Positions 11,216 to 61,234 of a DNA stretch of 64,000 bases are shown here, piece after piece (the stretch's first letter is position 1; every line of letters starts with the position of its first letter). This stretch comes from Cyanophora paradoxa CCMP329 (lineage: Eukaryota; Plantae; Glaucophyta). The stretch lies in NCBI GenBank assembly GCA_004431415.1, contig QPMI01000408.1, forward strand, positions 1,163,364 through 1,227,363, read 5' to 3'. The notes below the pieces were generated by a model, which saw only the letters and a list, made by a program, of their open reading frames with translations, searched no databases and had not been told where the DNA came from. A program made the position numbers and the translations under genes.

Positions 11216-12649
11216 CTAGCCGTCCTCCAGCGTATCGGACTCCACGGGCGCCCATGAGAGCCTATCCTCGAAGTCCTCAATCTGAAGCCAAGCAAAGCAG
11301 CGGGACTCGAGCTCAGCGATCGAAATGCAACATTTGATCCGAGGTAGGAAAGGAAAGCGGACCTGGAGGCGCGAGGCGCGGACCTTGCGGGCCGTGAAGA
11401 GGCGCCGGGCGGGGCGGGCCTCCCCCTCCGCCCACCGCCCGAACCCCGTCTCCTCCTCCCCGTACGGGAACGACCCTGCAATCCAGCCTGCGACGCGGGC
11501 GGATCAAATCCCCGCCCTAGGCCTCCTGCCGCCCCGCGCGCCCCGCACCGAGCTTGGCGAACGAAGACTCGACGTCGGACATCGAGAAGCGCCCAGCGGC
11601 GGCGCCCTCGCCCTCGCCCTCGCCCTCCGTGGCGACGTCCCCGAAGAGCCAGCTCTCCTCGCACGAGAGGTCCGAGATCGCCTCGAGGAGGGCGTCTCCC
11701 TCGTCCTGCGCGAGCCGGTCCAGGGCGCCGTCGATGACCCAGACAGTCGCGACGTTCACGTCGTGGCCCCGCATCTTCAGCACGTCCATCCAGAGCTGCG
11801 TGTCCCGCAGCGGCGCGACCACGCTGAAGAGCTTGCAGCCCGCCGGGACGGCCTGCAGCCCTGCGGCGGGCGCGGCGCGGTCGACGGAACGGAGAGGAGC
11901 GGAGCGGAAGGAAGAGGAAGCGCTTCGGCCGCGCACGGTCCAGGGTCTCCCGCTTGGCGTCAGCCACGTCCTTCTCCTCGACCTGGTACACGAACTGGTT
12001 CGTGCCCCACGGGAGCCGGTACGGACGCGCATCGAAGCCTGCAGGTGCGTGAGGCCGCGCGCGCGGGGCGGGCGGCGCGGGCGGCGTGCCGGTGCCGAGC
12101 AGGACGGCCTGCGGGAGGAGGCGGACGAGCACGGCGCGCTCGAGGAGGAACTCGTCTCCGAGCCGCGTGCGCACGGCCTCAAGCCTCTGCAGCTCGGCAT
12201 CCGGCTCCCCGCCGTCTTCCAGCAGCGCCGCGAAGCGTGCCGCGAGCGAGTCGTCGATCAGCCGCTCGCCCTCGGGCCTCGCGGTCTCCGCGGAGCGCGC
12301 CGCCGCCAGCTGCACGCACAGCTTGAATGCGTCGCTCGTCTGTGCCGCCGAGGACGGCCCTGCGCGTGCGAGGGGATCGGACAGAGAAGCTGGACCGGAA
12401 CCGGCGGCGGATTCTCGAACCAGGCGTGGAGGCGGAGGCGACCGGCGCGGCTTCGAAGGCACACGGCCTCCTTTGCCGACGCTCGGCGCGCACGCGCGTC
12501 GCTTTGTCTGCGCCCAGCTCAGCCGAGCGCGAAGCGGCCGGTGTGCAAAGCGGCGGACCGTGCGGGCAGCGCTGTCCGAGCCAGCCTGATGCCGGCCTAG
12601 AGACGGACGACGGCAGGGGGGCCACAGGAAGGGCGAAGGCGAGGCTCAT
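11216..12649 (-). CDS. SAM-dependent methyltransferase, LCM/TIGR00027-like, probably plastid-targeted
   Basis: Transit-like MSLAFALPVAP. Motifs AAARSAET..RLIDDSLA, AVRTR..DEFL, QAVLLGTG|FDARPYRLPW and TVWVIDG. Acidic tail RLQ|IEDFEDRL...EDG*. Confidence 0.88.
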
Positions 12650-12956
12650 CGGAATTTGCTGTACGCGGGGCCCGGAGGGGGGAAGAAGTCGAACGGGGGG
12701 AAGAAGTCGAACGGCCACAAAATTCGAGCGGCTTTCACAGCGAAGGTGCGGTCGTCCGGGGCGAGCAGACGTGAGTACCATCCTATAGACGCCATAGCTA
12801 TTGTCACCTAGCGACTCCTGCGTCCGGGCTTCGCTGAAGTCGCGCACCGACCGGCCCGCCAACTCCGGCTTCGGAATGGGTCGTAAACCTCAGCTATGGG
12901 CTCACAATGCTCGCAGATAACATCTTGAAGACCCGGAGAGGCGAGCGATCGATACG

Positions 12957-15900
12957 ATGAGCGCGGCGGCTGCTCCACCGCAGCCCACGCCGGCTCCGCC
13001 AGCTCCAGCACCGATCCAGCCCGCAGCTGACTCGGCCGCCCCACCTCAAATAGCACAGGCCACGGCAGCGGCAGCAGCACCGTCACAGCCGCCTGCCCAG
13101 CCAGGTCAACCTGCCACCGCCCAGCCCTCAGCAGCACCGCCAGCTCAGCCCGCCGCCACTTCCCCCGCCCCCGGCGCCGCTCAGCCTGCGGGGCAGCCGC
13201 CAGCACAACCCGCCGCTGTGCCGCCTGCCCCGGCTGCCGCTCAGCCCGCGGGAGCGCCGCCAGCACAGCCTGCCGCGGCGCCGCCCGCCCCGGCCGGCGC
13301 TCAGCCCGCGGACCGCCGCCGGCACAGCCCGCTGTCGCGCCGCCTGCCCCGGCTGCCGCTCAGCCCGCGGGAGCGCCGCCGGCACAGCCCGCTGCCGCGC
13401 CGCCTGCCCCAGCCGCCGCTCAGCCTGCGGAGCAGCCGCCAGCGCAGCCCGCCGCCGCGGCCCCGCCCCGGCCGCCTCTCAGCCTGCAGGGCAGCCGCCA
13501 GTTCCGCCGGCTGTCGCGACCCCTGCCCCGCGTCTGGTCAGCCCGCGGGAACGCCGCCAGCACAACCCGCTGTCGCGCCGCCCGCCCCGGCCGGCGCTCA
13601 GCCCGCGGGAGCGCCGCCAGCACAGCCTGCCGCTGCGCCGCCCGCCCCGGTCGCCACTCAGCCCGCAGGACCGCCGCCGGCACAGCCCGCTGCCGCGCCG
13701 CCTGCCCCGGCCGCCGCTCAGCCCGCAGGACCGCCGCCAGCACAGCCCGCCGTCGCGCCGCCCGCTCCGGCCGCCGCTGCACCCGCCCCGGCCGCCGCTC
13801 AGCCCGCGGGAGCGCCGCCAGCACAGCCCGCCGCCGTGGCACCCTCCCGGCCGCCGCTGAGCCCGCAGGAGCGCCGCCAGCTCAGCCTGCCGCCGCGCCG
13901 CCTGCCCCGGCCGCCGCTCAGCCCGCGGGACCACCGTCGGCACAGCCCGCCGCCGCGCCGCCCGCCCCGGCCGCCGCTCAGCCCGCGGGAGCGCCGCCAG
14001 CACAGCCCGCCGCCGTGGCACCATCCCGGCCGCCGCTGAGCCCGCGGGAGCGCCGCCAGCACAGCCCGCCGCCGCGGCACCCGCCCCGGCCGCCGCTGAG
14101 CCCGCAGGAGCGCCGCCAGCTCAGCCTGCCGCCGCGCCGCCTGCCCCGGCCGGCGCTCAGCCCGCGGGACCGCCGCCGGCACAGCCCGCTGTCGCGCCGC
14201 CTGCCCCGGCTGCCGCTCAGCCCGCGGGACCGCCGCCGGCACAGCCCGCCGCGGCGCCGCCCGCCACGGCCGCCACTCAGCCTGCGGGACCGCCGCCAGC
14301 ACAGCCTGCCGCTGCGCCGCCTGCCCCAGCCGCCGCTCAGCCTGCGGAGCAGCCGCCAGCGCAGCCCGCCGCTGCTGCCCCGCCCCGGCCGCCGCTCAGC
14401 CCGCAGGACCGCCGCCGGCACAGCCCGCTGCCGCGCCGCCTGCCCCGGTCGCCACTCAGCCTGCGGGCAGCCGCCAGTTCAGCCAGTCGCCGCCGTCCCC
14501 GCCCCGGCTGCACCTCAGCCCGCCGCCGCGGCCCCCGCCCCGCCGCCGCCCAGCCCGCCGCTCAGCCCGCCGCCGCAGCCCCCGCTCCGGCCGCCGCTCA
14601 GGCTGCGGGGCAGCCGCCAGTTCAGCCCGCGGCGCCGGCGGCCGCCCAGCCGACCGTCCCGGCCGCTGCGCAGCCGCAAGCCCAGGCGGCGGCGCAGGCG
14701 CCAGCTCAGCCCGCCGCCGCTGCCGCCGCCTCGGCGCTGGCGCAGCTCCCGCAGAGCATCACGCGCGACCTCCAGAACTTCCTCCTGCAGTGCGCCGCCC
14801 TCGCGGACGCCAACCTCGCCGCCGCCGGCCCGCCCGCCGCCGGCCTCCTGCCCTTCGCGGCCGCCGCCCCCGCCCCGCGAGGCCGGCCCGGCAGCCGCCC
14901 CGGCGCCCGCCCCGGCCCCGGCGCAACCCGCGGAGGCCCCGGCGCCCGTGACGTCTACACGCACGCCCGCGAGCCCGCCGCCGCGGCCGACCAGTGGACG
15001 GTACGCGTACCCCTCCCCGTCCTCGTCGTACCCCTGACGGCTCCGCAGGCTGCGGTCACGGGCTTCGCGGTCGAGCAGGCGCCCGCCGAGCCGCCGGTCC
15101 GGTCGGCGCCGGCCCCGCCGCAGGCCGCCCCGCCCCCGGCGCAGGTCCGACCGCCCTCCCGCCCGCCCGCCGCCTATCCCCTCCTCCTGACGCCTCTGGC
15201 GGCAGGTCTTCCACGTCCAGACCCCCGTCCAGGTCGTCGTGGCGACGCCGGCCCAGACCGGCGCGGCGGCACCCGCGGCCCCGCCCCAGCAGGGCGCCCC
15301 GCCGCCGCAGCACGGCGCCGCCCCGCCGCCGCAGCAGCAGGGCGCACCGCCGCCGCAGCAGGCGGGGGCGGCGCTGCAGGGGGCGGGCTACGCGGAGCGC
15401 CTGGGCCTGCAGCTCGGCATCCTCGGCACCAAGTCCAACTACCAGCTCCCTTACAAAGCCCGCGCCCCCTTCTCCGCTCCCCCTCCTTGCCTCCTCTTTC
15501 TTCTCCACTGAGTTCGAGTCCACCCCTCAGGTCCGGGAGATCATGGACGCGCGCGAGGCGGACCGCCTCTACTCCCAGGTCCGCCCCCCGCCCTCGCCCC
15601 GGCCCCCGCCCTTGGATTCGGATGGGAGATAGGTGGACGATAGCGGGGGATATGATATGCTCGTGGAGCCGGGTGGGGGACAGAGAGAGTGGAAGGGAGT
15701 AGCAGCGAGAGAGCGCGCCGGGTGGAGAGAGGCCCGACGCGGGGCCGGGGCGCGCAGTTCCTGCGGGAGCGCGCGGCGGAGCGGCAGGAGGCCGACGGCG
15801 GGCGCCCGGGCTTCGGCGGGCCCCTCGGGCCCTACGGCTTCGACGAGCGCCCCGGCACCTCCCTCCCGGTGCCGCCTAACTGTTTTAATGTTTCTAACTC

Positions 15901-16744
15901 TGCTTTCTAACTGTTTTAACGTTTAAATCAGATCCGCGACGTGATCGCCCCCGTCTCGCGGCCCGCCACCGGCTCGGCCGGGAGTCCCTCCCGCGGCCGG
16001 CCCTACACGGGCGCCTCGGCGGGGGGGTACGGCCCCGGCTACGACCGCTACGCGCCCCCGCCCGGGGAGTGGCAGCCTGAGCCCGACCCCGGCATCACCT
16101 ACTCCGACCTCTACAACCCGCGCTCGCCGGTGGGTTTCCTTGAACCCTTGGCTAGACTTTAAACTGTTCCGCCCGGATTCGAACCCGCGCCCGCAGTACT
16201 TCAACGGGCGCGGCGTGGACGAGTACGACGAGTACGGCCGCCCGTACGCGGCGGGGCCCGCGCCCCCGCCGCAGGGGTACAGCAGCCACGGCCCGCCCCC
16301 GCCTGGCTCTGCCTACGGCTCGCGCGGCCGCGCGGGCTCACCCACGCGGCGCCCGCCCCCGGGCTCCGCCCCGCCGCCGGGTCGGCGCCGCCCACCAAAG
16401 CCTCGCCTTTTCGCCGGCTGACGTGCGCCATGTGCATGCGCAGAGCCCGGCGCGTACGCCCGCAGCCCGAGCCCTACGCGCTCGCGGCCGCCCTACTCTT
16501 CCGGGGGCTACTCGAATTCCGGGTCCGCCCCTCTCGAACCCGCTCGCGCGCTTCCGCCCCTTACGGCGTACCCCCTGCAGCTACGCGCCCCAGGCCCGCC
16601 GCGCGCCCCCGCCGCAGCAGCGCTCCCGGCCCCCGACCGGCTACGTTGAGGAGCCGTGCGTCGTACCCCCCCTCGCGTTGGCCCTGGCTGCAGCTGCTCG
16701 TTCGATTCGCCGACCGTCCCTTTCCGAGCAGATACTACTACTGA
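12957..16744 (+). CDS. Low-complexity Pro/Ala/Gln tandem-repeat protein with Gly/Tyr/Pro-rich C-terminus
   Basis: ATG at 12957 opens AQPAGAPPAQPAAAPPAPAA repeats. Later spliced exons include VREIMDAREADRLYSQ, GYDRYAPPPGEWQP and DEYDEYGRPY. Several 1-nt frame breaks occur within the array. Confidence 0.6.
13140..14560 (+). repeat. Coding minisatellite, ~60-bp unit, >20 copies
   Basis: Recurrent GCTCAGCCCGCGGGAGCGCCGCCAGCACAGCCCGCCGCCGCGCCGCCCGCCCCGGCCGCC-like unit. Confidence 0.95.
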
Positions 16745-19440: not shown

Positions 19441-22400
19441 CTACAGCTGCAGGATGCCTTGCGCGTGCAGCTCGCGCGCGGAGGGGGGTACGGCTTCGAG
19501 GGCGACGAGCGGGGGTGGGGAGGCCGCGGTCGCAGGGCCCGCCGGGCGGTCCACGGCACACAGTAGGCGGACGCGCGTGCCCGCGATCTGCTCGATCCAG
19601 ATGCCTGCCCGGGGTCGGGCCGCTCAGGGCGCGCAGGGGTACACTGCACGCGGAGCGGGAATGGGGTACCGCACCGGAGAGCTCAGCGACCTTGCCGGGG
19701 GGTACGCCGGCGAGGCCGAGGGGCGCCCCGCCGGCCTCTGGGCGCGGCTCGGTCGGGAAGAGGCAGCCCCGCACGATCCCCACGTCCGCCTGCGGGGCAC
19801 GTCTGAGCGGGCCGGAGGGGGTACGGGGACCGAGTCGACTCGCCTCGACCTCGAGCGCCGGTGCGCCGGGGGCAGCGCCGGGGGGAGCGATCCGCAGGAG
19901 GGCACGGGGTACGCTTGCAGGGCGGGGCGCGGGCGTCCTGCGGCGAGAGAGAATGAGAGAGGGGCGGGCGCCGGCGGGCCGACAGGAGGCGCGCTCGCCT
20001 GCAGCGGGGGCAGAAGGATGCGGTGGGGAGGCCACCGGGCCTGCGCGGGGCGCGTCGGGGATCGCGGGATCGAATTCGGGCGGACCCGCTGCGCACGGCT
20101 GCGAGAGGCCAACCCGCAGCGCGAGCGGCGCCGCGCAGGCTCCGCAGGCGTCATAAGGGGGCTGCGGGGGTGCGTGAGGGGGAACCGGTGCTGAGAGCGG
20201 GCGTGGGTACAGCGCGCACGAGGTCGTCGGAGGAGGAGGAGAGGACGGTACCCAGGACGGCGATGAGGGGACCCCGGGGGGCCCGGGAGAACGCGAGGGG
20301 TACGCGGGGGGCGGGAGTGCCCCCAAGGAGAGCCGAGGGTACGGGGGCGAGGAGGAGGGGGGAGGAGCCGGCGTCGATGCGGGGCGGCGGGAGCGGGTCG
20401 GGGCCGTCCCAGGGGAGGGGTACCGCAAAGGAAGAGAAGCGGTCGGCGATGAGGAGGGGTCTGCGGAGGGGTACAACATCAAAGAACGAAGATGAGGGCC
20501 AGGCACAAGCGCACGGGCGGAAGGCGGGGCCGGCGGGGCCCGGCTCGTCGTCCCTGCGGCAATCTAAGCGGCCTTCGGAGCGGTAGGGGGGTACAACGCC
20601 GCGCACGAGGACCGGAGCAGGGGTACGGCGTCGCGGAGGAGCAGCGGGGTACGCGCCCGGAGGCTGTCCAGGGCCTGGCCCGCCAGGAGGGGGTCCCGAA
20701 TCTCGACCGACTCCACAGCGCTGGAGGGGGTACGACGATTGAGATTTGGGGGTACGGGGATGGCGAAAAGGGGTTCTGGCGCACTCCGAGGGCCCCGCCG
20801 GGTCGACGACATACAGGAGTACCCGGGAGAGCCTGCAGCGGGTACGGCGTTAAGACGAGGGCGAGTTGGGTACGGGCGAGCGCGCACGGCTCGCAGAGGG
20901 AACCGGCGGGGAGGGGGCGGGCGGCGATGAGGAGGAGGGGGCACGAGAGGCGGGGCGGGAGGGGTTCGGGGGGCGGGGCCGCGGGGGCCTGCCCGTCGCC
21001 GATCTCGAGGACGCGCAGTGCGGCGCTCCCGTCGCGGGACGTCGCCGCCCGTCTCGCCGCCTCCTGAAGAAGTACCGTGTTCGGCTCGGGGGGCGGGGGA
21101 AGGGGCTCCTCGGGGGGTAGAGCCTCGGCGGCCGAGTCGGCGCCGCAGGAGAGGACGAGGAGGGCGCGGGGGGGTACGGCCCCGCCGCCGCGGAGCACGG
21201 CGGCCACAGCGGAGATCGCGTCTCGCCCCGACCTGCGAAGTTTGTGTCAGCGGGAGAAACAGAAGCCGAAGGGGGGTAGCCGCACAGTCGGCGGGAGGGG
21301 TAGAGGTGGCTGATCCGGAAGGAGCACCCCTCCCCCCCGAGGAGGGCCTCCACCAGGGGGCCCCTGGGGGGCAGCTCCAGGGCGCAGACGGCGGTGGGGG
21401 GTACAGACGCGTCGGAGAGGAGGACGAGGGGGGGCGCGGCGCGGCCGGCGCCGGGGAAGCCGCGGGGGACGGCCCGGGCGACCCGGGCTTCCAGAGCGAA
21501 GGGTCCCGGAGGGGGGGCGCGCGCCAGGGAGGCCGGGGTGTGGACGGAGCGGGAGGGTACGGGACCAAAGGGCGAGGCGGAGGCGTCGGGGGCGTCGAAC
21601 CCAACCGCGGCGGGGCCCGCGGGGGCGGCTCGGGCCCCGGGGCGCGCGTCGGGGGGTACGCGGGAGAGGAGGGAGGGCAGGTCCATCCCCGGGGGGGGAT
21701 CGAAGGGCTCGAGGAGGCGGGGGCCGAGGACCAGCGGGCGGGCGTACCCCGACACCCGCTGCAGGCGCCTGCCGCTCGATCAGAAAACAAAAGAAACGAA
21801 AAGAAAGGAAAGGAAAGGAGAGGAAGGGGCACCAGGGGGCGTGGACGCGGACGAGGCAGCCCGGGTCGAGGGGGGGACACTCGCGGGAGCGCTGGTGGGG
21901 GGGGATGAACGCCACGTCCACCCAGTCCTGGGAAGGGGAAGAGTGAGATGCGGGGGCCCAGGGGCGCTCTGAGGGCGCTGAGGAGCTCTGTAGGGCGCAG
22001 GGGACTTCGCTGCCGCCCGAAGGACGCTCGAAGCTCGGGCGAGACTCGAGCGAGGGAGCCCGTCGCCTTAGAAGAAGCTAGCGAGAACGAGCTAGAAGCT
22101 AGAAGCTAGAAGCTAGAACCCAGTCCTAGGAAGGGGAAGAGTGAGGGGCGGGGCCCGGGGGCGCCCCGAGGACGACACCAAGGTGCTCTGCAGGGCGCAG
22201 GGGACTTTCCGCGAGGCAGCCCGTCGCCCTAGAAGACGCTAGCCGGAACAAGCTGGCTAGATGGAGCTACATGGAGCCGGCTAGAATCTAGAAGCGGGGG
22301 TGGAGCCGGCTAGAAGCTACAAGCTAGGGTCTAGACGAGAACACATGCACCTCCTGCGGCGAAGCGGGGTCCGAGCCGGCCGGCTCCAGAGGGCCGCTGC

Positions 22401-24572
22401 GCCGCACGTGAGGCGAGAAGAGGGGGCGAGAGAGGAGCGGGGCAGAGGTGCGGACCTGCCGGGGAGCACGCGGCAGGTGGCCACGGGCACGCCCCGCGCC
22501 ATGCGTGCCTGGAGGGGTACGGGGTCAGAGCGGCACAGGGGTGCAGCTAAAGAACAGGGGAAGTGCCTGAACAACGGCCAGGAGGAGGGGGGCCCGACCC
22601 CCGCGCCCCCCCGGCGCCGCGTGCCCCAAACTCTGCGCGGGCGTTGAGGAGGGGTCGAATGGGGGCGAAGGCTTGGGAGGGCTACCCGGAGGCGGTGGTA
22701 AAAGTTGGTCTCGTCGTTCTTCTGGCGGCGGGCGATCTCCGCAAGCCGCCCCGCGTACTGGCCCCTGTACCCCGCCGCCGCTCAGTCAGGGGTACAGGGA
22801 CGAACGAAGAAGGGGGCGGGGCGACGTACTTCGAGGAGCGGCCGCGGGAGGCGTGCGGGCGGGGCGCCTGCAGCTGCGGCTGCTGCCCGGGGGTACCCGA
22901 ATCCGCCGCCGCCGCCCTCAGGCTCTCCAGCCACGCGTTGCGTGACGTTGGACCCGAGGCCCGCGGGGTGAGCGCGGATGAGGGCGCGGGGGGGTACGCC
23001 GCGCCCCCCGAGGACGGCCCCGTGGAGGGCGCGTCGAAGTCCGCGTCGGCCTCGTCCCCCGCGGGGGGGTACGGGGGCGGGGAGGAGGAAAGGGATCCGC
23101 CGGGGGCCGGCGCGAAGGGGTCGACGGGCTTGCTTCGGCTCGCGGAGGAGGAGCGGGGGAAGGACGGGCGGGCGGAGGAGGGGCGCGGCGCGGCAGAGGT
23201 GGCGGGGGCGGCCGGGGCGGCGGCGGCAGCGGCAGCAGAGAGGGGCAGGGACTGCGTTGGGCCCGCGAGCTGCGCCAGGTAGCGCTGCTTGAAGCTGGCG
23301 CCCTCTCCAGGGGGTCCCGACCCCCCCGCCGGGATCACGAACGGGTCGACTGCTGTGGCTGTGGGGCGGACGGGGCGTCAGAGCGGAACGCGCGGAGAGG
23401 GGCGGGAGAAGGAAGGCGCCGCACCCTTCCCGCGGGCGCGGCTGCCGCCGGGGCGGCCGGGGCGGGCGCGCGGGGCGGGCCGGTGCCCGAAGAAGGTCGC
23501 CAGGGAGGGCCCCATGGAGGCGGAGGAGCCGAGGCTCGCCTGGCTCGCGCTGGGGCCCGGGTCCCCCTCCGCCCCGGCCCGGGCCCGTCCGCGAGGGCGA
23601 GCCCGGCGGCGTCAGCATCGCCTTGAACGCCGCCGCGGCGGCCGCTGACGGCTGCGAGTGGCGCGGCCGCTTGCGGGGCACGAAGGCGCCGCCGGGCAGC
23701 TCCCTCGCCACAGCGGCGCCCGCGAACGGGAAGCGGCGCGCCCCCGCGGCTGCGGAGGACTGGCCTGCGGCGCGCGTTAGCGGGCGGGGCGCAGAGAGCG
23801 GCGCGGGCGGCCGCGCACCGTCGTCGCCCGCCGCAGGTGCCGCCGCCTGGCCTGCGGGCGGCACGGGCGGGCGAGTGGGCGGGGCGCGGAGCGGGTCCCG
23901 GGTGCGCGAACGCACCACCCTCCTCCTGCTCCTGCTCCTGTTCGTCTGCGTCGCCTTGGGACCAGTCCGCGTCGTCGCCGCCCGGGCCGAAGAGGTCGCC
24001 GAAGGACGGGACGGCGGAGGTCCACGGGGCGACGTGCTCCTCCGCGCTCTCCGCGAGCCGCTTCGCCGCTTCCTTCTCCCGCCTCGCGCGGATGACTTCC
24101 GCGTCCTCGCCGACCTCCGGCTCCGCTGCGGGGCGGGAGTCAGCGCGCATGCGGCGGGCCGAGGCGATGCCGCACGTACGCTCGTTCAGACGGTCATCGG
24201 GCTTCTGCGAGCGCGCGGCGGTAGCGTCAGAAGCGCTTGGGAGAGCTGCAGAATGAGCGCACGCCACGAAGGAGCTGCCGCTCCTTGAGGAGGTTCACGA
24301 GCGCGTCGCGCTCGTTCTGGCCATAGAGCACCATCACCTCGTCCTCCTCTGCGGCCCCGGGCGCGCGTGGGTCGCGCTGCAGACGCGCTCGCTCGCACGG
24401 CTCGTTCACCGGCGTAGTCCTCGTAGGCCTCGGCGTCCTCCACCCTCGAATCCCATCTCGGCGGCTCCGCGAGCTGCGGGAGCGTGCGTGAGCACGGCGC
24501 GCTCCGGAATTCCCGGATCGAATTCGCGCCACGGACCGCCGAGCCGAACACCGGGGCGCCCCGCCGCATCAT
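19441..24572 (-). CDS. SPIDR-like protein: disordered N-terminus plus tandem OB folds, the last with a CxxC zinc ribbon
   Basis: Exons LLLAVVQ|ARMARGVPVATCRVL, DWVDVAF...GCLVRVHAPW|RLQRVSGYARPLVLG, FALEARVARAVP...LVLLSDA, YDACGAC and ADVGIVRGCLFP..LAGVPPGKVAEL, ending ELHAQGILQL*. Family assigned by recalled similarity, not by search. Confidence 0.55.
21921..22245. repeat. Intronic direct duplication (~200-bp period) that includes a splice acceptor; (AGAAGCT)n lies between the copies
   Basis: CCCAGTCCT(G/A)GGAAGGGGAAGAGTGAG at 21921 and 22119; GCTCTG(T/C)AGGGCGCAGGGGACTT at 21985 and 22185. Confidence 0.9.
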
Positions 24573-24946: not shown

Positions 24947-26432
24947 TTACAGCTTGGACTCGAGGATGTCCGCCGAGGTGGTGGACAGGAGGCCGTAGAT
25001 CGGCTCCGAGAAGAGGACGACGGCGCAGAAGACAAGCTGCTTGTAGACGTCGAAGATGGCGTACAGCAGGATCTCAGAGTCGACGGTGACGGCGCGGGTG
25101 CCCTCGCCAATGACCCAGATGGTGAGGTACGGGAACCACGCAGCGAGCATGAAGAAGAGCGCGATGGCTGCGGGGCCCAATCAGAAAACCGGACGCAGTG
25201 AGCGCTCAAGTGGAGAGGAAAGGGGCGCACTGGTGGCGTAGCCGCGCGAGTCCGACTTGCGGTAGGCAGCCGGGCGGAAGTAGGCGAAGAGGATGCCGAA
25301 GAGCACCAGCTGGGCGCCGCAGGCGAAGGAGAACCAGCCCCAGCGGGACGAGTTGGCGGACAGGGCACCGAAGAGGCGGGTGGCGACGAAGATCAGAGCC
25401 GAGACGACACCGGCAACGATGGCCTCAATCGAGGCGCCAGCGAGGAGGCCGAGGACGTAGACGAGCGCCGGGGTGGTCGCCGCCCACTGGACGTAGCGAG
25501 CCCAGTAGAACACGCGGAAGCCGGTGTTGGCGTCGTTGGGGAGCGCAACACCACCCTGAGCACGAGCGAGGGCGTAGTAGACAGCGGCGCCGGTGACGGC
25601 GATGGCGACCTGCACGATCCCGGCTAAGCACCTGGCAGAGATAGCCGCATTTCGTGCATGCGGCTGTGCGCACGGTGAGGACGTGGAGGCGGCGGGACTC
25701 CTTGCCGTGGAAGACGGTGAGATAGCCGAAGACGATCATGGCGACCAGGTGGAAGCCGAAAGCCAGCCAGTAGAAGTCGTAGCCGAGCTGGGTGATGTTG
25801 TCGGCGTTGCCGTACAGGGTCGACTGTGCAAAAGCGTAAGAACGCAGAGCTAAGCATGTGCAAGGGAGCACGGGCATGTGCACCTGCTTCACGAAGTACT
25901 GGTTGAAGTAGTCGTAGAAGAGCGAGTTGCCGGCGAAGGCAGCAGTGTCAGGCCCGCTCATGCCAGCGCCGGGGAGGAGCCGGTTGATGAGGTTCTGCGA
26001 GGTCGGCTGGAGGAAGTTGCCGTTGTTGCCGCGGCCGTCAATGAAGTAGCTGTACTTGTTGGGCGCGAAGGTCTGCCACTGGCTGCCGCCCGCGGCGAAG
26101 TTAACCTGGCTCGGGCCAACCGGGTTGTAGTAGCCAATGGTGTTCGCGGTGGCGAGCTTGCCATCGACGCCAACGTTGCCGTTGTTGTAGAAGCGCGACG
26201 CATCGGTGTAGGGCTGGTTGATGCCCTGGCCGGCGTACGCAACGGCGCTGCCGACAGCGCCACCGTTCAGGGAGCCGCCCTGGCCGCCATTGAGCGTCGG
26301 GTACTGCAGGCCCGAGTAGACCTAACGGAATCGACCGGTCAGCATGGCGGCGAGCGGAGAGCATGGTTAACTGCGTGAAATCGTGCTGGGCGCTCGCAGG
26401 CGGGGCGGGCGGCTTGCCTGGAGGAGCGCCAT
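24947..26432 (-). CDS. Type-1 (microbial) opsin-family protein, ~400 aa, 5 exons, non-canonical retinal site
   Basis: Seven hydrophobic helices: helix C FYWARYVQWAATTPAL, helix E RWGWF, helix F WFPYLTIWVIGEG, helix G EILLYAIFDVYKQLVF. Exons 26432-26418, 26321-25884, 25823-25674, 25609-25231 and 25167-24947 join in frame. Confidence 0.93.
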
Positions 26433-27172
26433 CTTTCTTGTTTATTACGAGTGGGGGTACCCGATACTTTCCTCTTTCGGGCACCAACTTTCCTCCTCAA
26501 TTGTACCCCAGCGATCGAATCCCGGCGAGTCGACTTCGGAGAACGCAATTGCAATGGAGTCCCTCCGTCCTCTAGGCCGGCACGCGCTAGCGCTTAGAAC
26601 GTGCTCACAACTAGCACCGCGCGGCAGCCGTCGCTCATTCACGCGCGATGGGCGCCGGCGCCTTGCAGCACGCGCTGAGCTGAACTTCTGAGCTCACTCG
26701 CTCACAAGAGCGTGTCCACAGCTGCGTGCTCAGCGGCGCTCGCACAAGGCTCATGATCAGCGGCGCTCGTCAGGGTTTTAGGGTTGCGCATGCGGCACTA
26801 GCGCTTGAATAGTGCAGGAAGTTGGAGCAGCGCCGTCAAGGCTTCTGGTTATAGGCCGCAGAAGAGCGAGATGGACTCGGCGAGCTCGCCTTAACAAGCT
26901 TGAGCTCGCTAAAGTTAACGTTGAAAGCGACGTCGACGCGTACGTCGACCAGCGCCCGCCCGGCTCGCGTGTCGACGTCTTGCAGAGCACCTCAGTTCAA
27001 CGGTTAGCTTGAATCGCTGATCGCTTGGTGCGCTTCGACGTCCGCCCAGTTTGCGCCGCGCGCTTTGGAAGCGGATCCGGAGACAAAGCTGCGCATGCAG
27101 TAATTGAGGTTGTGACCGTCGGACGCTACAATCTAGCGTCTACATTCTGAGCGCGACTGGGAACACTAAGCA

Positions 27173-50100: not shown

Positions 50101-51030
50101 CCCGCCTCGCCCCGCCCCTCGCGCGCAGACCAAGCCGGCGGAGGTCATGATCGACTACGCGATGGGTCCGTTTGCATTGATATCGATCCTGCTTTCGTTC
50201 CGTCTCTAATTTACTTCGTTTTACTTGGGCGCCCGGCAGACATGATGGACGCGGTGCTGGCGATGAACCGCGAGCGCGGCTCGAGCCTCTCCGTCCGCAT
50301 CGGCGTCCACACCGGCTCCGTCGTCGCAGGCGCGTCCTCGAAGTCCTGCAGAAACAGCTGCAGAGCGCATTTCCGACGAGATGTCGGGCTCACGCTGTCG
50401 GGCTTGCAGGTGTCATCGGCACGAAGCGGCTCGCGTACGACATGTGCGCTGTGGCTCAAAGCTTGCGCTTGCGCTTCCGGTGGCGGGTTCCTGACGGGTC
50501 GGGGTCGCAGATGGGGCGACGCAGTCAACACGGCGAGCAGGTGCGCATTTCCGCTCGACATTCAAGATTTCGGCCCCGCCGCAGTCCTTGCTAACATGCC
50601 GAGCAGGATGGAGTCTTCGGGCGTGGCCGGGCGCGTCAACATCAGCGGGAGCACGCACGAGGTGCCGCGCGCCCCAGCGTCGCGCCGCTCGTCTACGATT
50701 TCTTTCGCGATCGCCGACCCCGCCGCCGGCGCCTTGCGCAGCGCGTGAAGTACAAGTTCGCGTGCGAGGACCCGCGCGAGGTCGAGGTCAAGGGCAAGGG
50801 CGTCATGACCACGTGCGCCCTCCTGCGGCCTTCGGCCCCGCCTTTCGATTCTCATACCCTTCGTTTTTAGGTACCTCGTGAAGGGCCGCCTGGCCTCCCG
50901 CTCCTTCAAGCAGCAGCGGAGCGCCTACGGGTCGTTCCTGCAGCGGCGGCCGGACCCGGCGCCGGCCGGGTCCGGCTCGTCCACGCCCCCCCCGCGCATC
51001 CCGTCGCGGGCGGGCAGCGTCTACATATGA
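35159..51030 (+). CDS. Large multi-TM class III adenylyl cyclase with PAS domain (TmcB/C-like N-terminal architecture), many introns
   Basis: PAS: SILEAASDAIIV..DAEGSIQVFNAAAEQ|LLGWSADEA...RK|NGTKFPAHVSV...FVLFIR|DVTER. Then EKARSDLLLRNILP and cyclase motifs FSDLVGFT, KVKTI|GDAYM, RIGVHTGSVVAG|VIG, YDI|WGDAVNTASR|MES, VKGKGVMTT|Y. N-terminal TM exons include YYLPYHRPFSN. That it is a single gene is inferred. Confidence 0.85.
47996..48725. repeat. Intronic microsatellites: (CCCCG)n ~47996-48043, (GCGAT)n ~48356-48382, CTAGTCCCAGCTTT repeats ~48604-48725
   Basis: Directly visible tandem units. Confidence 0.9.
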
Positions 51031-52152
51031 GCGGGCAGCTTCGATTCACATCTTAGCCGTCCTCTCTGCCTTCGACGTATTGATATCGAAACGAAGGTTT
51101 TCGCTTGTCGCGCACAGTGTTTCTTTTTATATTCGTAACATTATTGTAGAAAATGTTTAGGCCTCGTTCGTACATACCAGCAAGCGCCGGTACAGCTAGC
51201 TATAGCTTTAGCTAGCTAGCTAGATCTGTAGAGCTAGCTTTAGCCTGCTGCTCTCTTGATCTAGATCTGCTCAGCGGCTGCTGGCAATCGGCGGCTGCTG
51301 GCAATTACTGGCAGCTGCAATGTGGCCAACTGTACCTTTACCTTGTGATGTGCTGTGTATACTTTCAAGCTTGTATTTGCGTCTTTAATTTGTGATAGAG
51401 AAGCCCTTGTCTGTTTATCTGACTTACTGTGCTTATCGGCACATCTAGTGTCGGCGCCTAAGGGCCGACTAAGCATAATCTAGTTTGACCGTCGGACTCC
51501 GGGACTGTGATTCCGCTTTCGAATTCCTCCTTTCAAGTATAGATTCGAATTCTATAGCTAGATCTACAGATGGATTGGCCGCCGAGCTCGAATTCGATGC
51601 TGCCAGGTGGTCGTATTGAGATCGTATGTAAAGAATTCCGCGATTACCCAACCATATATATCCTGCCCCCGCTAATTGAGGTGACGTCATGATCAGAAGC
51701 GCTTCCCAAGCCCTTGAGGAATTCGAATTCGAAACTGGGCCGGGGAAAATCATGGCATGTCCAATGGCCAGCCACATTTTTTGTCCCAGCATGCATGGCA
51801 TATATGCATAGCTATAGATCTAGATGCGCACATGCACGTGCACACGCGCGCATGCATTCAGCGACCTTCAAGGCTTGGATTCAAAAAGTCGGCGTAATTT
51901 ATAAAAAGCAGCAAGAGAGAATTTTCGAAGTCTGCTTGGCTAAGGTACATAATTTGATTTTGTCCACTGCGTACACTCAGCTAGCCCTAGAGGCGAGAAA
52001 TAATCATACTGCTTCCAAAATCCGAACTTCGGAAGCAATTACGTATACCATGAACTATTACTGAAGAGAATTATGAACTCTTGATTTGTTGTGATTTGAT
52101 ATCCTTCATTCTGAAAACGCGAGTGGGAAGCTTAAGATGAAGATGCTCATGA

Positions 52153-54252
52153 TCAAGCGCGGTCGGCTGTCTTCTGGGAGGCAGTGAGAATCGCCAACAT
52201 TTCCGCGCTGTCAATTCGTTGCATCTGCGCCGCCGCGATAGCCAGAACCCCCTGCGATCGCGAATTCGAACCCTCGAGTCGAGAGAATTCATGCACATGA
52301 TTAGAGTCTTTAGACTTAATCATGAAATTATAATTATAACCTGACTTGTAACGAATATCGGAACACGTCAGCGGCAGAAAGTACACGAACCTTCACGTCG
52401 CTGGCAGCGTATGCCAAAAGGTGATTTGGCAGAGTTCGCTGGAGGAAGAGGCGAGGGTTCGATGCGAAATCTACGACCTGGGGACCAGATATCGATTTAG
52501 TGTTAATCATGTGATTTTGGGCATATGCATGTGGAGGAGAGTGTCACCTGCTTGAAGCGGTTGATTGCGTGCGGTGCGTACCTCCCAAGAAGCTCGTTGA
52601 GCCCGGCCGGCCGCTTGTGGCCCTTGATTTGCTTCTCAGCTTCCTGCACGTGCACATGCCCGGAGAAAATCGATATCATCATGATGTCGTCAACATGCTT
52701 CGTAGTTAAATTGATTGACTGAGAGCACCTGGGTGTCGAACACGTGATTGATGCTGACTCCGTATTCTCGCCGCAGCGTTCTGGCATCATTTATGCAGCC
52801 GTGCATGAACTGAGTTTTCGATCGATTAGCAAATGCAAATAAATATTCAGCAATCACTCTTGAATATCAGCATCGTGTGAACTAGAACTCATCTCACCTT
52901 CATGATTGATGGATTCTCGAGTAATTCCTGGAGACCAGCATTGCGAAATGGGCAAAGGGACCAAGAGACCGACTCGGATGCTTGATAAATATCAAGAACA
53001 AATGTCTCCGTGTCCGTCGCGATCTGAGAAATTTTCGATGAATATGTAGTATATGTATAGCTATCATTTGCGACTTGCATATTTTTATGTTCCGAATGCG
53101 GTCCCAGATGTCTTAAGATTTGTATTTAGAAATATTATTGCGAATGATGTACTGTACCTGAATCAACCTGATTTGGCCATCCGCACCACCAAGATTGAAC
53201 CCCTCGATGTCCAGCGCGAAGTAATTTAAGCCGTGCACGTGCAAGGCGCGCACCACCTTGTTCACCCCCGAGAAAGTCGTCACGTACTTGAACCGTTCGC
53301 CGCTCATCACGACCTCAAAGCTGTCGAGCTCGTCATCGTATGCATCTGTACGTGCGGTCCATTGTTAATTTTAATGAAACTACAGTTAAGCTCAATGAAT
53401 TAATATTAATGAAATGCAGGTCTGACCTGAAGTGTCTGAATCGGTATATACGTCATCGTCAGTTTCCTGATGATCGTCTTCATCTGAGTCGACGTCATGA
53501 TCAGCTGCACACCCATGATAAAATATCAATTTTTCGATATTTTAAAATGCTCTAGCTTAATCAATCCAAGCGCGCGCCGCAAGCTTAAGGCTCATCGTAA
53601 TCACCCGAAATCGAATTCGAATCTTCATCATAATTATCAGATGCATAATGTGCGATATTAATTACTCGCTTCGATTGCTATATATATTATTATAGGCTAG
53701 CGCATGCGCATATACATATATATACGTGCTCTGAACATGCACATGCATATATATGATCATGAATGCTAAACCCAAACCTGACGTTGACGCGTCGACTTCG
53801 GAATCGTCCAAAGCCGAGCCCTCATACGCTTCGTGTGCGTTATCGACTTTCATTCGCAGGTGCTGCTTGAGGGACGCCTGGCTCACGAACGCGAACCGCG
53901 CAGCTGACCGCGGGCAGCCGCTGACGGGGCAGACGGGGTGCTCGCACTCGCTCCAATCGCCCTCGCAGACGCCGCAGGGCTTCGCATCCTGCGCTGCTGC
54001 ATACGCCTCGTCGTGTTCATCATCGCCCTTCTCTCGCAGGTGCTGCTCGAGGGACGCCTGGCTCACGAATGCGTGCCGCGCGGCCGACCGCTTGCAACCG
54101 CTGACGGGGCAGACGGGGTGCTCGCACTCGCGCCAATCGCCCTCGCAGACGCCGCAAACGCCTCCCTGGCAATCTGTGTCGCGCCGGTGCCGTTTGACAG
54201 CTCCAAAGCTAACGAAGTAGCGGCCGCAGCAGAGGTAACCGGACGAAGTCAT
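52153..54252 (-). CDS. DEDDy 3'-5' exonuclease (EXD1/WRN-exo-like) with N-terminal tandem zinc fingers and acidic linker
   Basis: ExoI FALDIEG (~53203-53220), IRLIQ|IAT, LLENPSIMK|FMHGCINDA (ExoII), VFDTQ, GLNELL and ExoIII YAASDV (~52394-52411). The N-terminal Cys/His repeats are in ORF 53662-54258. Confidence 0.88.
53823..54156 (-). repeat. ~180-bp tandem coding duplication of a zinc-finger module
   Basis: Two near-identical copies encoding CGVCEGDWxECEHPVCPVSGCxRSAARxAFVSQASLxQHLRxKxDxxH. Confidence 0.95.
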
Positions 54253-54527: not shown

Positions 54528-57500
54528 ATGTCGCGTCCCTTTATCGCTTCGCAAGCGAGCAATGGAAGCGTCAGCGCTCCCCTGGCGCTGCCGACGGAGC
54601 GCGCGGAGGCCGCCCTCGCTGCCGGTCAGGTCGACCTGCCGCCCCCGCTCTGCGCGGGTGTGATCGACCTGGAGAACGACGCCGAGTCTGTCGGCGGCGA
54701 CGGTGCGCGTTAGCGAGCGCGCTCGTCGAGATTGCAGAGCGCCGACGTCCTCTCAGAGGCCGAGGATCCGGAGCCAGCGGAGCCCGAGGCCGAGGCCGAA
54801 GAGCTCGACGACGAGGCGCGGCTCGTCGATCGCCTGAATTCGAACGAATGCGCCTGGCGCGTCGAGCTGCGTCGGAACGGCTCCGCGAGCACTTACGCCG
54901 CGCGCAGGGAGGTGGTCGTCTCGGACTGCGCGTGGCGGCAGTGGCGGGCGAAGAAGGGCGTCGAGCCCGTGCTGAGGCGGGACGTCCTGCGCAAGCTCAT
55001 CCGCATCGCCAGCGGCCAGCGCGGCGCACGCCTCTCGAAGCGGATCGCCCTCCCGGTGTGCACGCGGCGCCGCCCCGCGCGCCCCTCCCGGCGCCGCTGA
55101 GCGGTGTGCGCAGCAAGCGCCGCAGCCGCAGCTCTTCGAATCGTACCTCTGCGCCCGCGGCTGGCGCGCGCTATGGGAAGAGGCGCGTTCGTCGCGCCCC
55201 GCGCCCGCGCCCGCCCGCCGCGCGTGCGGCACAGGCCCGCGGGCTGACTGAGCGACAGGTGGTGGGGGTCTCGGGGCGGGACGGCGTCGTGCGGGATCAA
55301 ATTCTGCTGTGGTGCGCCCCTTTGAGCCCCGCGCCCCGCGCTCCCGCGCCCGGCCCACGGGGCGGGCGCAGGGGCGTCTTCGGCCACGACAGGACGGAGG
55401 CACGGATCCGCTACATCGAAGAGAAGATCCAGGGGCGGCCCCCCTTGGAGCTGCGGCCGGCGCCGCGGCCCGCCGGCCCCGGCGGCGCGAGGCTGCCGCG
55501 CGAGTTTGCGGGGGACCTGCCGCCCTCCGCCCCCGGGCGCCGCTACCTCGTCGCAGCGTCCCTGTACCCCGACGAGGCCCCGTCGGCCGCTGGTACCGGT
55601 GACGGCTCCGGGGGCGAGCGGCGGGGGCGCGACCGCGAGGCGGGTGCGCCGCGCCGCGCCGCGCGTGCAGCGGGTCGCGGGCCGCGGCGCCGACGCGGGC
55701 GGGGCGCAGACCAGCAGACGCTGGCGGAGGTGCGGGCGGAGGCGGCGGCGGTGGCGCTGCTGCCGCTGGCGGGCGGCGCCGACTTCCCGAACGAGATCGC
55801 CGCGCGGAGCAGCGGGGCGCCGTGGGCGCCGCCTGGCCCTGCCTCGTCAACGGGCGGCCCGGCACCGGCAAGACCTCCTGCGCCGCCCTCCGGTGCCCGC
55901 CCCGCCCCGCGGCCCGGCCCGGCAGCGCCGCTGACGCGGGGCGGCGCAGGCTGTGGGCGGGGCACCGGGCCTACTGGGGCCGCTCGCGCGGGGCGCGGCT
56001 GCTCTCGCGGACGGGCACTACCGTTCGGTCTTCCTCGCGGCGAGTGCGGCGCTCTGCCGCGAGGTCCGCGCCGCCTTCTGCAGGCTGGTGCGGCCCGCCC
56101 CGCCCGCCTCGGCCCCGCGCTCGCTGCCGGTGACGCCGGGCGCGCAGCGGCGGCGGAGGGCGCCTCGATGCGGGCGGTCGTCACGCGCGACGCGGCGGCG
56201 GCGGCGGTGCGCCCACCATTTCTAGATTCGATCTCCTCAGAGAGCGTCGTTCTGACGGCGGGGCGGCGGGGCAGGATGAGGAGGTGGACGGGATGGGCGC
56301 CGACGACGACGCGCTCGCCGCCGCCGCCGCCGCGTCGCTGGCGGAGCTCGACGAGGCCGCCTTCCCCCTCTTCGGTGCGCCCCGCCGCGCTCGCGGCGCC
56401 GGCGCCGCTAAACCTGACCGGCCGCGGCGCGCAGTGACGCGGGACCGGTTCCTGCGGATGCTGAACGGCGCGCTGGACCGGCCGTTCGACCTCGCCGGCG
56501 AGGGCGAGGTGCGGGAGCCGGCAGCCGGGCACGCCGCGGCCGGCGGGGGCGGCGCTGACGCGGGCGGCAGCGGCTGGTGACGGCGGCGCGGTTCCAGGCG
56601 GAGCTGTGGCCGGAGCTGTGCACGGCGGGGCGCGACGAGCTGCGGGCGATCGGCAGCGACGCCGCGTGGCTCGAGATCGTCTCCCACATCCGGTGCCCGC
56701 CCCGCCACGTCCTCCCGGCGCCCCTCCCGCGCAGCGTGCGCTGACGGCGGACAACGGCGCAGGGGCAGCCTGGACGCGCTCCTGTCGCCCGACGGCTGCC
56801 TCTCCGAGGCGCAGTACCATGAGCTCGGAGAGGCTCTCCGACGGCTCGGAGCTCGGACGCATGCAGTGCGCCCCGCGCGGCCCGCCCCGACCCGCCGCGT
56901 CACGTCAGCCGTGGACCGACCCGCGCCCTGCGGCAGGTCGACGCTGGGCGAGGGGCAGCGGCGGGCGGTCTACGCGCTGCACGCGCGCTACGAGCAGCTG
57001 AAGCGGAGCCCGCGGCACGCCCGCGCCGGCGGCGCCCTCTTCGACCACATGGTCCGCCCGGGCCCTGCCCCGCGCCTGCCCCGGCCCGCGCCCCGCGCCC
57101 CGAGCTGACGTGCGCGGGCGCCTCCGCTGCAGGACGTCGTGCCACACGGTGCACCACGTGTTCCGGCGGGTGCGGGCGGGGGGGTACCGCGGGCCGGCCG
57201 TGCACGAGGCCTACGTCGACGAGGTCCAGGTGGGCCCTTTCCTCGCAGGGCGGCCTTCCGGCCCCGGCTTGGCCCCGTCTTGAGGCGGCCGGCCGGGCAG
57301 GACTTCACGGCGGCGGAGGTCGGCCTCGTGGCGGCCTTCGCGGGCGACGCGCGCGCGCTGTGGCTCTCCGGCGACTCCGCGCAGGCCATCGCCCGCGGTC
57401 CGCCGCCCGCCCCACCACGCCCCGCGCCCCGAGTTCCTGACCGCGGCCCCGGCTCGCAGGGGTCTCCTTCCGCTTCTCGGATCTGAAGCGGCTGATCTGA

Positions 57501-61229: not shown

Positions 61230-61234
61230 AGAAC
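61163..61234. repeat. ~35-bp tandem duplication at the helicase/retrotransposon junction
   Basis: TATATATACAATTCATTATATCAAACT(T)GAAGAAC at 61163 and 61201. Confidence 0.92.

What the first reader, a model, noticed from the sequence alone, without database searches (positions are those of the whole stretch)
24947..25823. Microbial opsin with the retinal lysine displaced by one residue and a rewired binding pocket
Seen: helix G reads EILLYAIFDVYKQLVF. Aligned without gaps to bacteriorhodopsin ETLLFMVLDVSAKVGF, the Schiff-base position K216 is Gln (25037-25039) and a Lys sits at 215 (25040-25042), while D212 is retained. Helix C RYVQWAATTPALVYV gives a D85/T89/D96 motif of Q-T-V, so there is no primary counterion or proton donor. 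Helix D shows D115A, M118F and G122R; P186 is Leu. R82, W86, W182, Y185 and W189 are kept, and the gene is intact with strong codon bias. Established: Lys-less opsin-related proteins exist. Inference: an adjacent replacement Lys plus coordinated pocket changes suggests either a naturally relocated Schiff base (possibly unprotonated, UV-absorbing) or a non-retinal ligand sensor, i.e. a possibly undescribed opsin class.
Basis: partly seen in the sequence, partly recalled or inferred. Interest (0 to 1): 0.85.

Follow-up and report, generated by a model that had tools for sequence, protein, structure and literature searches.

The report
Lysine-less opsin paralog in Cyanophora
This is a real, expressed rhodopsin-like membrane protein gene of the alga Cyanophora paradoxa that has lost the retinal-binding lysine; the lysine next door looks incidental, and an arginine sits where retinal's ring would go, so it is most likely one more retinal-free "opsin-related protein", not a new kind of light sensor.

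Summary
On the minus strand, a spliced gene (opsin exons 25823-25674, 25609-25231, 25167-24947) encodes a type-1 opsin. Helix G reads D-V-Y-K-Q: Gln at the Schiff-base position (BR K216) and Lys one residue earlier.

The gene matches, exon by exon, a 400-aa Cyanophora paradoxa (glaucophyte) protein. Published proteomics detected that protein in isolated cyanelles.

The "relocated Schiff base / new opsin class" reading is not supported:
- **The Lys is not conserved.** Two C. paradoxa paralogs form a strongly supported clade with this gene, sister to the canonical Opsin 2. All three share Q85, R122 and Q216, but position 215 is K, R or Q.
- **The ring site is occupied.** Arg sits at BR G122 (generic 4.54), where the β-ionone ring packs. 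None of 74 Lys-bearing homologs has a charged residue there. All five Arg-bearing homologs lack the Lys.
- **There is a direct precedent.** In flotillin-associated rhodopsins, a Glu at what I infer to be the same position helps block retinal.
- **The pocket is more polar** (Q145) and lacks D85, D96, D115 and P186.

Best reading (about 0.7): a retinal-free, light-insensitive opsin-related protein (Rh-noK type) in which K215 contributes a polar contact.

RNA reads, paralog coding DNA and model coordinates could not be obtained. Another piece of this genome was already noted in this scan (paralog P0002).

The parts
24947..25167 (-). Exon 4: helices F and G, C-terminal tail ending -SKL, stop codon TAA at 24949-24947
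   Evidence: Translation. Splice acceptor CAG at 25170-25168 read. Matches the C-terminus of P0001.
25037..25042 (-). Codons AAG (Lys, P0001 K370 = BR position 215) and CAG (Gln, Q371 = BR K216)
   Evidence: Ungapped alignment to LR and CsR. Column table.
25168..25230 (-). Intron 3 (63 nt, GTGCGC...CCGCAG), phase 1
   Evidence: The stop in the exon-3 reading frame lies inside it.
25231..25609 (-). Exon 3: helices B to E. 100% identical to residues 202-327 of P0001
   Evidence: 100% identity over 126 residues. Pfam PF01036, E 1.1e-12. PDB hits CsR and LR.
25376..25378 (-). Codon CGC = Arg279, at BR G122 (generic 4.54), the β-ionone ring contact. Proposed plug of the retinal site
   Evidence: Literature.
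25487..25489 (-). Codon CAG = Gln242, at BR D85 (primary counterion / proton acceptor position)
25610..25673 (-). Intron 2 (64 nt, GTGCGC...GTGCAG)
25674..25823 (-). Exon 2: helix A with the family motif NITQLGYDF.WL.FGF
   Evidence: Alignment.
25824..25883 (-). Intron 1 (60 nt, in frame and without a stop, but low GC3 and absent from the annotated protein)
25884..26303 (-). N-terminal Asn/Gly/Tyr-rich region of about 140 residues preceding helix A. No recognisable family
   Evidence: No Pfam match. Atlas scores below 0.9. The TAILS peptide AGQGINQPYTDASR maps here.
26609..26638 (-). Candidate first exon (MSDGCRAVLV, GTGAGC donor) of the older gene model. The newer model instead uses ATG 26432-26418 with a GC donor and an acceptor before 26321
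   Evidence: Which first exon is used could not be settled without RNA reads.

Best explanation
The gene encodes a retinal-free, light-insensitive opsin-related protein. It is a microbial-rhodopsin homolog without the Schiff-base lysine (Rh-noK type) and belongs to a three-gene, Cyanophora-specific clade that arose by duplication of a canonical glaucophyte opsin (Opsin 2).

**Shown.**
- The 7TM rhodopsin fold is kept.
- BR K216 is Gln.
- The clade shares Q85, R122 and Q216.
- Position 215 is K, R or Q in the three members.
- The protein is made and co-purifies with cyanelles.

**Inferred.**
- The long Arg side chain at BR G122, helped by F118 and Q145, fills the β-ionone ring site so retinal cannot enter.
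- With D85 neutralised and no protonated Schiff base, R82 and D212 balance each other.
- The Lys at 215 is not a chromophore anchor. It is a polar or cationic side chain contacting Y185 and D212. This is the same helix G to helix F contact made by T204 and Y174 in sensory rhodopsin II. In the paralog the pair becomes Arg with Glu at 185.

**Guess, at low confidence.** The protein then works without light as an abundant cyanelle-associated membrane protein. It may act as a structural or regulatory subunit, possibly in mixed oligomers with the pump-type cyanophopsins.
For: **Identity and expression.**
- Exon 3 is 100% identical to P0001, a Cyanophora paradoxa protein in EukProt.
- The old gene model with the same helix G was quantified at about 6.3 and 8.8 fmol in cyanelle preparations with and without periplasm. 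It has EST EC660779.1 and a paralog-specific N-terminal peptide (PMC4510345).
- GC3 is 0.916.

**Fold.**
- AlphaFold2 with a 79-sequence alignment gives pLDDT 92.2.
- Foldseek to CsR 6gyh gives TM 0.96 and rmsd 1.4 Å.

**Loss of the retinal site.**
- Q at BR 216, with Lys at 215, in an ungapped alignment.
- The paralogs read DVHRQ and DVIQQ.
- The clade (P0152,(P0001,P0002)) has 100/98 support and is sister to Opsin 2 at 99/94.
- Among 74 homologs with K216, position 122 is G 67, A 4, and L, C, S once each, never charged. Position 215 is A/T/S in 69 of 74 and never K or R.
- All 5 sequences with R122 lack K216, in three separate lineages.
- The paralogs erode the pocket further: Y90 and N182 in P0152, E185 in P0002.

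**Precedent.**
- In PsFAR, H84 and E120 block retinal, and neither single reversion restored binding. M116/E120 spacing and helix-C numbering map these to BR T90 and G122.
- The unliganded Lys of PsFAR makes H-bonds in the core.
- A non-Gly residue at 4.54 clashes with the ring.
Against: - No experiment or coordinates: the prediction tool returns no atomic model, so I could not measure where K370 or R279 point.
- Position 215 (7.49) borders retinal C14/C15 in known rhodopsins. A Lys there is therefore sterically close to where a Schiff base would form.
- This gene is the most conservative of the three paralogs. It keeps W86, T89, T90, W182, Y185, W189 and D212.
- P0002 evolves about four times faster (31 against 8 unique changes). 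Its Arg could be secondary decay rather than evidence about the ancestor.
- Codon logic (Thr to Lys to Gln or Arg, single steps) even allows Lys215 to be ancestral to the clade. The paralog codons were not available.
- The functional part (structural or regulatory subunit) rests only on analogy.
Confidence: 0.7

Rival explanations
1. Relocated Schiff base: Lys370 (BR 215) binds retinal, or a shorter apocarotenal, covalently. D212 would be the only counterion, giving an unusual and possibly UV/blue photosensor.
For: - Position 215 (7.49) lies against retinal C14/C15 in SRII and BR (PDB 3t45).
- The gene keeps W86, T89, T90, W182, Y185, W189 and D212.
- It is the slow-evolving copy.
- Lys at 215 is unique among 98 homologs.
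Against: - Arg at BR G122 and Gln at 145 occupy and polarise the ring site. No Lys-bearing homolog tolerates a charged residue at 122.
- The residue at what I infer to be the same position helps block retinal in PsFAR.
- The two paralogs that share Q216 and R122 have Arg or Gln at 215.
- P186, which shapes helix F around the polyene, is Leu.
Confidence: 0.08
2. Retinal-free but ligand- or ion-handling: the polar residues lining the former pocket (R82, Q85, R122, Q145, D212, K215, Q216) form a binding site or conduction path for a small anion, carboxylate or proton. The protein would then be a chemosensor or passive transporter of the cyanelle envelope.
For: - Hydrophobic pocket positions are replaced by polar or charged ones.
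- There is net extra positive charge, from R122 and K215, with no new acidic partner.
- Light-independent activities are reported for other rhodopsin-fold proteins (PMC10730872 listed; yeast ORPs).
Against: - No conserved set of polar residues beyond Q85, R122 and Q216 across the three paralogs.
- In PsFAR the equivalent polar cavity is simply water-filled and stabilising.
- No partner, transducer or domain is attached in this gene.
Confidence: 0.15
3. Decaying duplicate without a function of its own.
For: - It belongs to a lineage-specific expansion in which the sister copy P0002 is fast-evolving and compositionally skewed, with 24.7% Ala.
- No orthologs were found outside C. paradoxa.
Against: - The reading frame is intact across four exons, with GC3 0.916.
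- It has only 8 unique changes against 31 in its sister.
- The protein was quantified in two cyanelle preparations and has an EST.
Confidence: 0.05

Closest known systems
Cyanophora paradoxa Opsin 2 (ACZ04975; P0003/P0151), Frassanito et al. 2013
   Same: - Same species and the same glaucophyte-specific subfamily, about 52% identity.
- Shares the helix-A motif, the F-G loop WVIGEGTRAVTVD and the C-terminal tail type.
- Sister to the Lys-less clade in the tree.
   Different: - Opsin 2 keeps Lys at BR 216 (DVITK), Glu at 85, Gly at 122 and Pro at 186.
- It has only a short N-terminus.
- This gene has Q216, K215, Q85, R122 and L186, plus an N-terminal extension of about 150 residues.
Microbial rhodopsin homologs lacking the retinal lysine (Rh-noK / opsin-related proteins: yeast HSP30/YRO2/MRH1, haloarchaeal ORPs, Guillardia Rh-noK)
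   Same: - Rhodopsin fold with BR K216 replaced, hence presumed retinal-free.
- Expressed in the native cell (PMC7714340, PMC4915679).
   Different: - Independent origin. Fungal HSP30-like sequences sit in a separate clade.
- This clade arose inside glaucophyte opsins and co-purifies with cyanelles.
- It carries a Lys immediately before the lost one, which no other homolog examined has.
Flotillin-associated rhodopsins (PsFAR; Kovalev et al. 2025 preprint)
   Same: - Retinal-free with the rhodopsin fold kept.
- A long charged side chain sits at the helix-D Gly that contacts the β-ionone ring (E120 there, Arg279 here).
- An unliganded Lys is held by polar contacts in the core. Paralog P0152 also has an aromatic residue at the BR T90 position, like H84.
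   Different: - FARs are bacterial proteorhodopsin paralogs linked to flotillin genes, and many keep the canonical Lys.
- Here the canonical Lys is gone and there is no flotillin context.
- The E120 to BR G122 equivalence is my inference from residue numbering, not a structural superposition.
Coccomyxa CsR (6gyh) and Leptosphaeria LR (7bmh) proton pumps
   Same: Best solved relatives by sequence and by predicted fold.
   Different: They are retinal-binding DTD-type pumps. This protein lacks the acceptor, the donor and the Lys.

Membership tests
Type-1 (microbial) rhodopsin fold, Pfam PF01036 | Significant match to the Bac_rhodopsin profile and a 7TM fold superposable on solved members | tested here: met
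   72.6 bits against a cut-off of 24.6 for P0001. TM 0.96 and rmsd 1.4 Å to 6gyh.
Retinylidene (chromophore-binding) rhodopsins | Lys at helix G position 7.50 (BR K216) for the Schiff base | tested here: not met
   Gln (CAG 25039-25037) in ungapped alignments.
Retinylidene (chromophore-binding) rhodopsins | Open hydrophobic pocket, in particular a small residue at 4.54 (BR G122) | tested here: not met
   Arg279. The 74 Lys-bearing homologs have G/A/L/C/S only. The non-G rule is described in PMC13739731.
Retinylidene (chromophore-binding) rhodopsins | Carboxylate counterion at BR D85 (D212 as second counterion) | tested here: not met
   Q at 85. D212 is kept.
Retinylidene (chromophore-binding) rhodopsins | Covalent retinal and a visible or UV absorbance band | not testable with these tools
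   Needs expression with retinal and spectroscopy.
Rh-noK / opsin-related proteins | Microbial-rhodopsin homology combined with absence of the canonical retinal Lys | tested here: met
   The class is defined in PMC7714340 and PMC4915679.
Glaucophyte cyanophopsin family (Opsin 2 branch) | Groups with Cyanophora and Cyanoptyche opsins to the exclusion of other eukaryotic and prokaryotic rhodopsins | tested here: met
   Six-member glaucophyte clade at 100/99, with Opsin 2 as sister at 99/94.
Fungal HSP30/YRO2 opsin-related proteins | Membership of the fungal ORP clade | tested here: not met
   The HSP30-like P0116 and basidiomycete P0147 form a separate starred clade.
Flotillin-associated rhodopsins | Proteorhodopsin paralog next to a flotillin gene | not tested
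   This is a eukaryotic spliced gene, and the nearest relatives are glaucophyte opsins. No FAR sequence was compared directly.

The most novel reading that the evidence does not exclude
Lys370, one residue before the canonical site, does form a Schiff base with retinal or a shorter apocarotenal despite Arg279. This would make the protein the first natural microbial rhodopsin with a relocated chromophore lysine, abundant in a primitive plastid.
Probability: 0.07. Interest if true: 0.85.

Novelty: new member of a known kind. Interest (0 to 1): 0.35.

Why it matters
If the reading is right, this is not a new photoreceptor class.

It does add a eukaryotic, plastid-associated and protein-level-confirmed example to the large but functionally obscure group of retinal-free rhodopsin homologs.

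It also suggests a recurrent way of closing the retinal site. A long charged residue sits at the helix-D glycine that touches the β-ionone ring. This is seen here, in a chytrid protein (P0020), in one uncharacterised Logan-assembly protein (P0081), and by inference in bacterial FArhodopsins.

One practical correction follows. One of the "three highly abundant opsins" of Cyanophora cyanelles in the proteomics literature is this Lys-less paralog, labelled "opsin 2" only by its best BLAST hit. Light-driven functions should not be assumed for it.

Tried and rejected
- **Coding DNA of the paralogs for dN/dS and codon-level ancestry.** The look-up of encoding contigs has no record of P0002 or P0152.
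- **Orthologs in metagenomes.** A single-protein scan found none. An alignment scan found only three hits at 30-37% identity. The 5.8-billion-protein search gave only six family members.
- **Side-chain geometry of K370 and R279.** Structure prediction returns no coordinates and none are stored.
- **Full-length single-sequence fold, for the N-terminal region.** pLDDT was 40.8, which is uninformative.
- **N-terminal region in Pfam and the ESM Atlas.** Nothing above noise.
- **Second opsin or a lipase gene in this window, as in paralog P0002.** None found.
- **Frassanito 2010 paper.** Not held in the library.
- **Indel or register shift in helix G.** Rejected, because flanking residues stay in register with Opsin 2, LR and CsR.
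- **Assembly error.** Rejected, because the older annotation's gene model has the same helix G.
- **Hand-joined model.** No search was run with one. The database protein P0001, which matches the exon translations, was used instead. The three opsin exons were concatenated only inside one script, to compute GC3.

Full report
**What is there.**

The window is GC-rich eukaryotic DNA. On the minus strand at 24947-26303 lies a spliced gene. Reading the DNA gives three short introns with GTGC..CAG boundaries: 25883-25824, 25673-25610 and 25230-25168. It gives three opsin exons:
- 25823-25674 encodes helix A.
- 25609-25231 encodes helices B to E.
- 25167-24947 encodes helices F and G plus the stop.

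Upstream, the same frame stays open to about 26303 and encodes an Asn/Gly/Tyr-rich region of about 140 residues.

Exon 3 alone matches Pfam Bac_rhodopsin at E 1.1e-12. In the PDB its best hits are the Coccomyxa pump CsR (6gyh) and the Leptosphaeria pump LR (7bmh).

An exhaustive HMMER search with exon 3 found a 400-aa protein, P0001, that is 100% identical over that exon. Its sequence equals the exon translations. Its source names it Cyanophora paradoxa tig00020553_g10775, so the window is from the glaucophyte C. paradoxa.

I used the exons by reference and the database protein P0001. The three exons were concatenated only inside one script to compute GC3.

**The observation.**

Helix G reads ...EILLYAIFDVYKQLVF..., with AAG at 25042-25040 and CAG at 25039-25037. 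HMMER aligns exon 4 without gaps to LR and CsR from the helix-F Trp through helix G. Asp matches BR D212, Lys matches the residue before the Schiff-base Lys, and Gln matches the Lys itself. Residues downstream stay in register with the canonical paralog, so there is no indel.

The remaining statements hold in a 98-sequence alignment:
- Q, T and V at BR 85, 89 and 96.
- A115, F118, R122 and L186.
- R82, W86, W182, Y185, W189 and D212 retained.

GC3 is 0.916 in the opsin exons, against 0.55-0.64 GC in the introns. The same helix G appears in a gene model from the older annotation, printed in the supplement of Köhler et al. 2015 (PMC4510345). An assembly error is therefore unlikely.

**Expression.**

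That supplement lists the gene as 10704_cds:3399. It is named "opsin 2" only after its best BLAST hit.
- It was quantified at about 6.3 fmol in cyanelles and about 8.8 fmol in periplasm-free cyanelles.
- EST EC660779.1 supports it.
- The TAILS N-terminal peptide AGQGINQPYTDASR lies in the N-terminal region that only this paralog has.

The paper speaks of three highly abundant opsins in cyanelles. It cites immunolabelling of the envelope for Cyanophopsin 1.

**The family.**

Only a handful of relatives exist in 5.8 billion proteins:

| Protein | Source | Helix G |
|---|---|---|
| P0001 (this gene) | C. paradoxa | DVYKQ |
| P0002 | C. paradoxa | DVHRQ |
| P0152 | C. paradoxa | DVIQQ |
| P0003 / P0151 (Opsin 2) | C. 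paradoxa | DVITK |
| P0153 | Cyanoptyche | DVLTK |
| P0009 | Cyanoptyche | DVLSK |

A maximum-likelihood tree groups (P0152,(P0001,P0002)) with 100/98 support. That clade is sister to Opsin 2 at 99/94, inside a glaucophyte clade at 100/99. Fungal HSP30-like proteins lie elsewhere.

The three clade members share Q at BR 85, R at BR 122 and Q at BR 216, while position 215 is K, R or Q. P0001 and P0002 also share Q145 and L186. P0152 adds Y90 and N182. P0002 adds E185.

Two metagenome scans found no orthologs.

**Why I read it as retinal-free.**

2. **Arg sits at BR G122.**
   - Among 74 homologs that keep K216, this position is G 67, A 4, and L, C, S once each. It is never charged.
   - All five sequences with Arg there lack K216. 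They fall in three separate lineages: this clade, a chytrid protein and one uncharacterised protein.
   - A recent numbering paper states that non-Gly residues at this position (4.54) clash with the β-ionone ring (PMC13739731).
3. **There is a structural precedent.**
   - In the flotillin-associated rhodopsin PsFAR, cryo-EM and mutagenesis show that H84 and E120 fill the polyene and ring sites. Single reversions do not restore retinal binding.
   - Its unliganded Lys is held by H-bonds to Ser and Asp residues (bioRxiv 10.1101/2025.04.29.651185).
   - From that paper's numbering, D79 is the counterion, M90 is the donor site and M116 is four residues before E120. I infer that H84 corresponds to BR T90 and E120 to BR G122. 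That is the position of Arg279 here, and of Tyr at position 90 in P0152.
4. **Position 215 looks structural.**
   - It is the A/TS colour switch (7.49).
   - In sensory rhodopsin II its Thr H-bonds the Tyr equivalent to BR Y185 (PMC3274258).
   - In this family the 215/185 pair reads T/Y, K/Y, Q/Y and, in P0002, R/E. That fits an inter-helix polar contact rather than a chromophore anchor. This rests on a single covarying case and is an inference.

The predicted fold is a normal rhodopsin: pLDDT 92.2 and TM 0.96 to CsR.

**What keeps the alternative alive.**

- Position 215 lies next to retinal C14/C15 in real rhodopsins, so a Lys there is not sterically absurd.
- This gene is the conservative copy. 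In a relative-rate count it has 8 unique changes against 31 in P0002 (chi-square 13.6). P0002's Arg could therefore be later decay.
- Thr to Lys to Gln or Arg are single-nucleotide steps, so Lys215 could even be ancestral to the clade.
- I could not obtain paralog DNA or model coordinates to test either point.

I therefore leave about 0.07-0.08 for a relocated Schiff base.

**Function.**

Beyond "retinal-free", function is inference by analogy. Lys-less opsin homologs make up about a tenth of known microbial rhodopsin genes. In yeast they regulate the plasma-membrane H+-ATPase and pH homeostasis (PMC7714340).

I commit, at low confidence, to a light-independent structural or regulatory role in cyanelle membranes, possibly in mixed oligomers with the pump-type paralogs. 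A polar-cavity ligand or ion function is the main rival (0.15). A functionless duplicate is unlikely, given the codon bias, slow evolution and protein detection.

**Comparison and novelty.**

- It works like an Rh-noK or opsin-related protein, and meets that class's defining features.
- It resembles FArhodopsins in how the pocket is closed, but it is not a member of that family.
- It is not a fungal ORP.
- It fails three tested defining features of chromophore-binding rhodopsins.
- The gene is annotated and appears in a published proteome. I found no paper in the searchable library that notes the loss of Lys in glaucophyte opsins.
- One algal survey stated that it kept only sequences with a conserved Lys in helix 7 (PMC10865886).
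- Earlier notes of this scan on other pieces of this genome describe paralog P0002 as a Lys-less opsin possibly fused to a lipase, and describe Cyanophopsin 1. My data agree that P0002 carries a Lipase_3 domain.

**Verdict.** This is a new member of a known kind. Interest is modest at 0.35.

Noticed in passing
window 26418-26638 (minus strand): Two conflicting first exons for this gene. The older model starts MSDGCRAVLV (ATG 26638, GTGAGC donor, acceptor before 26303). The EukProt model starts MALLQ (ATG 26432, unusual GC donor, acceptor before 26321). A TAILS N-terminus at Ala34 of the older model suggests N-terminal processing.
   Followed up: partly
window 24950-24958 (minus strand); also P0009, P0151, P0153, P0003: The protein ends in -SKL, and related tails (-SKL, -TSKL, -ESKLS, -KKL) recur in glaucophyte opsins of this branch. 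The motif resembles both a PTS1 peroxisomal signal and a class-I PDZ ligand. Its meaning for a 7TM protein found in cyanelle preparations is unexplained.
   Followed up: no
P0002 (C. paradoxa tig00020830_g14407, not in this window): The closest paralog is annotated as a 660-aa fusion of the Lys-less opsin domain to a class-3 lipase domain (PF01764). It evolves about four times faster and is 24.7% Ala. No lipase lies next to the gene in this window.
   Followed up: partly
P0022 (Gloeochaete wittrockiana transcript): Another glaucophyte opsin, in the Cyanophopsin-1 branch, has Arg at the Schiff-base position (DCVIR) while keeping D85 and Gly122. This looks like an independent loss of the Lys within glaucophytes.
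   Followed up: no
window 51000-54000 and 60000-62000: Stretches of 44-50% GC lie in a genome region that is otherwise 63-84% GC. They hold no long ORF with an obvious identity. They could be intergenic, a mobile-element remnant or organelle-derived DNA.
   Followed up: no
window 12000-16000, 20000-24000, 55000-58500: Blocks of 74-84% GC in which long ORFs are open on both strands at once. This is a composition artefact that makes ORF lists unreliable here.
   Followed up: no
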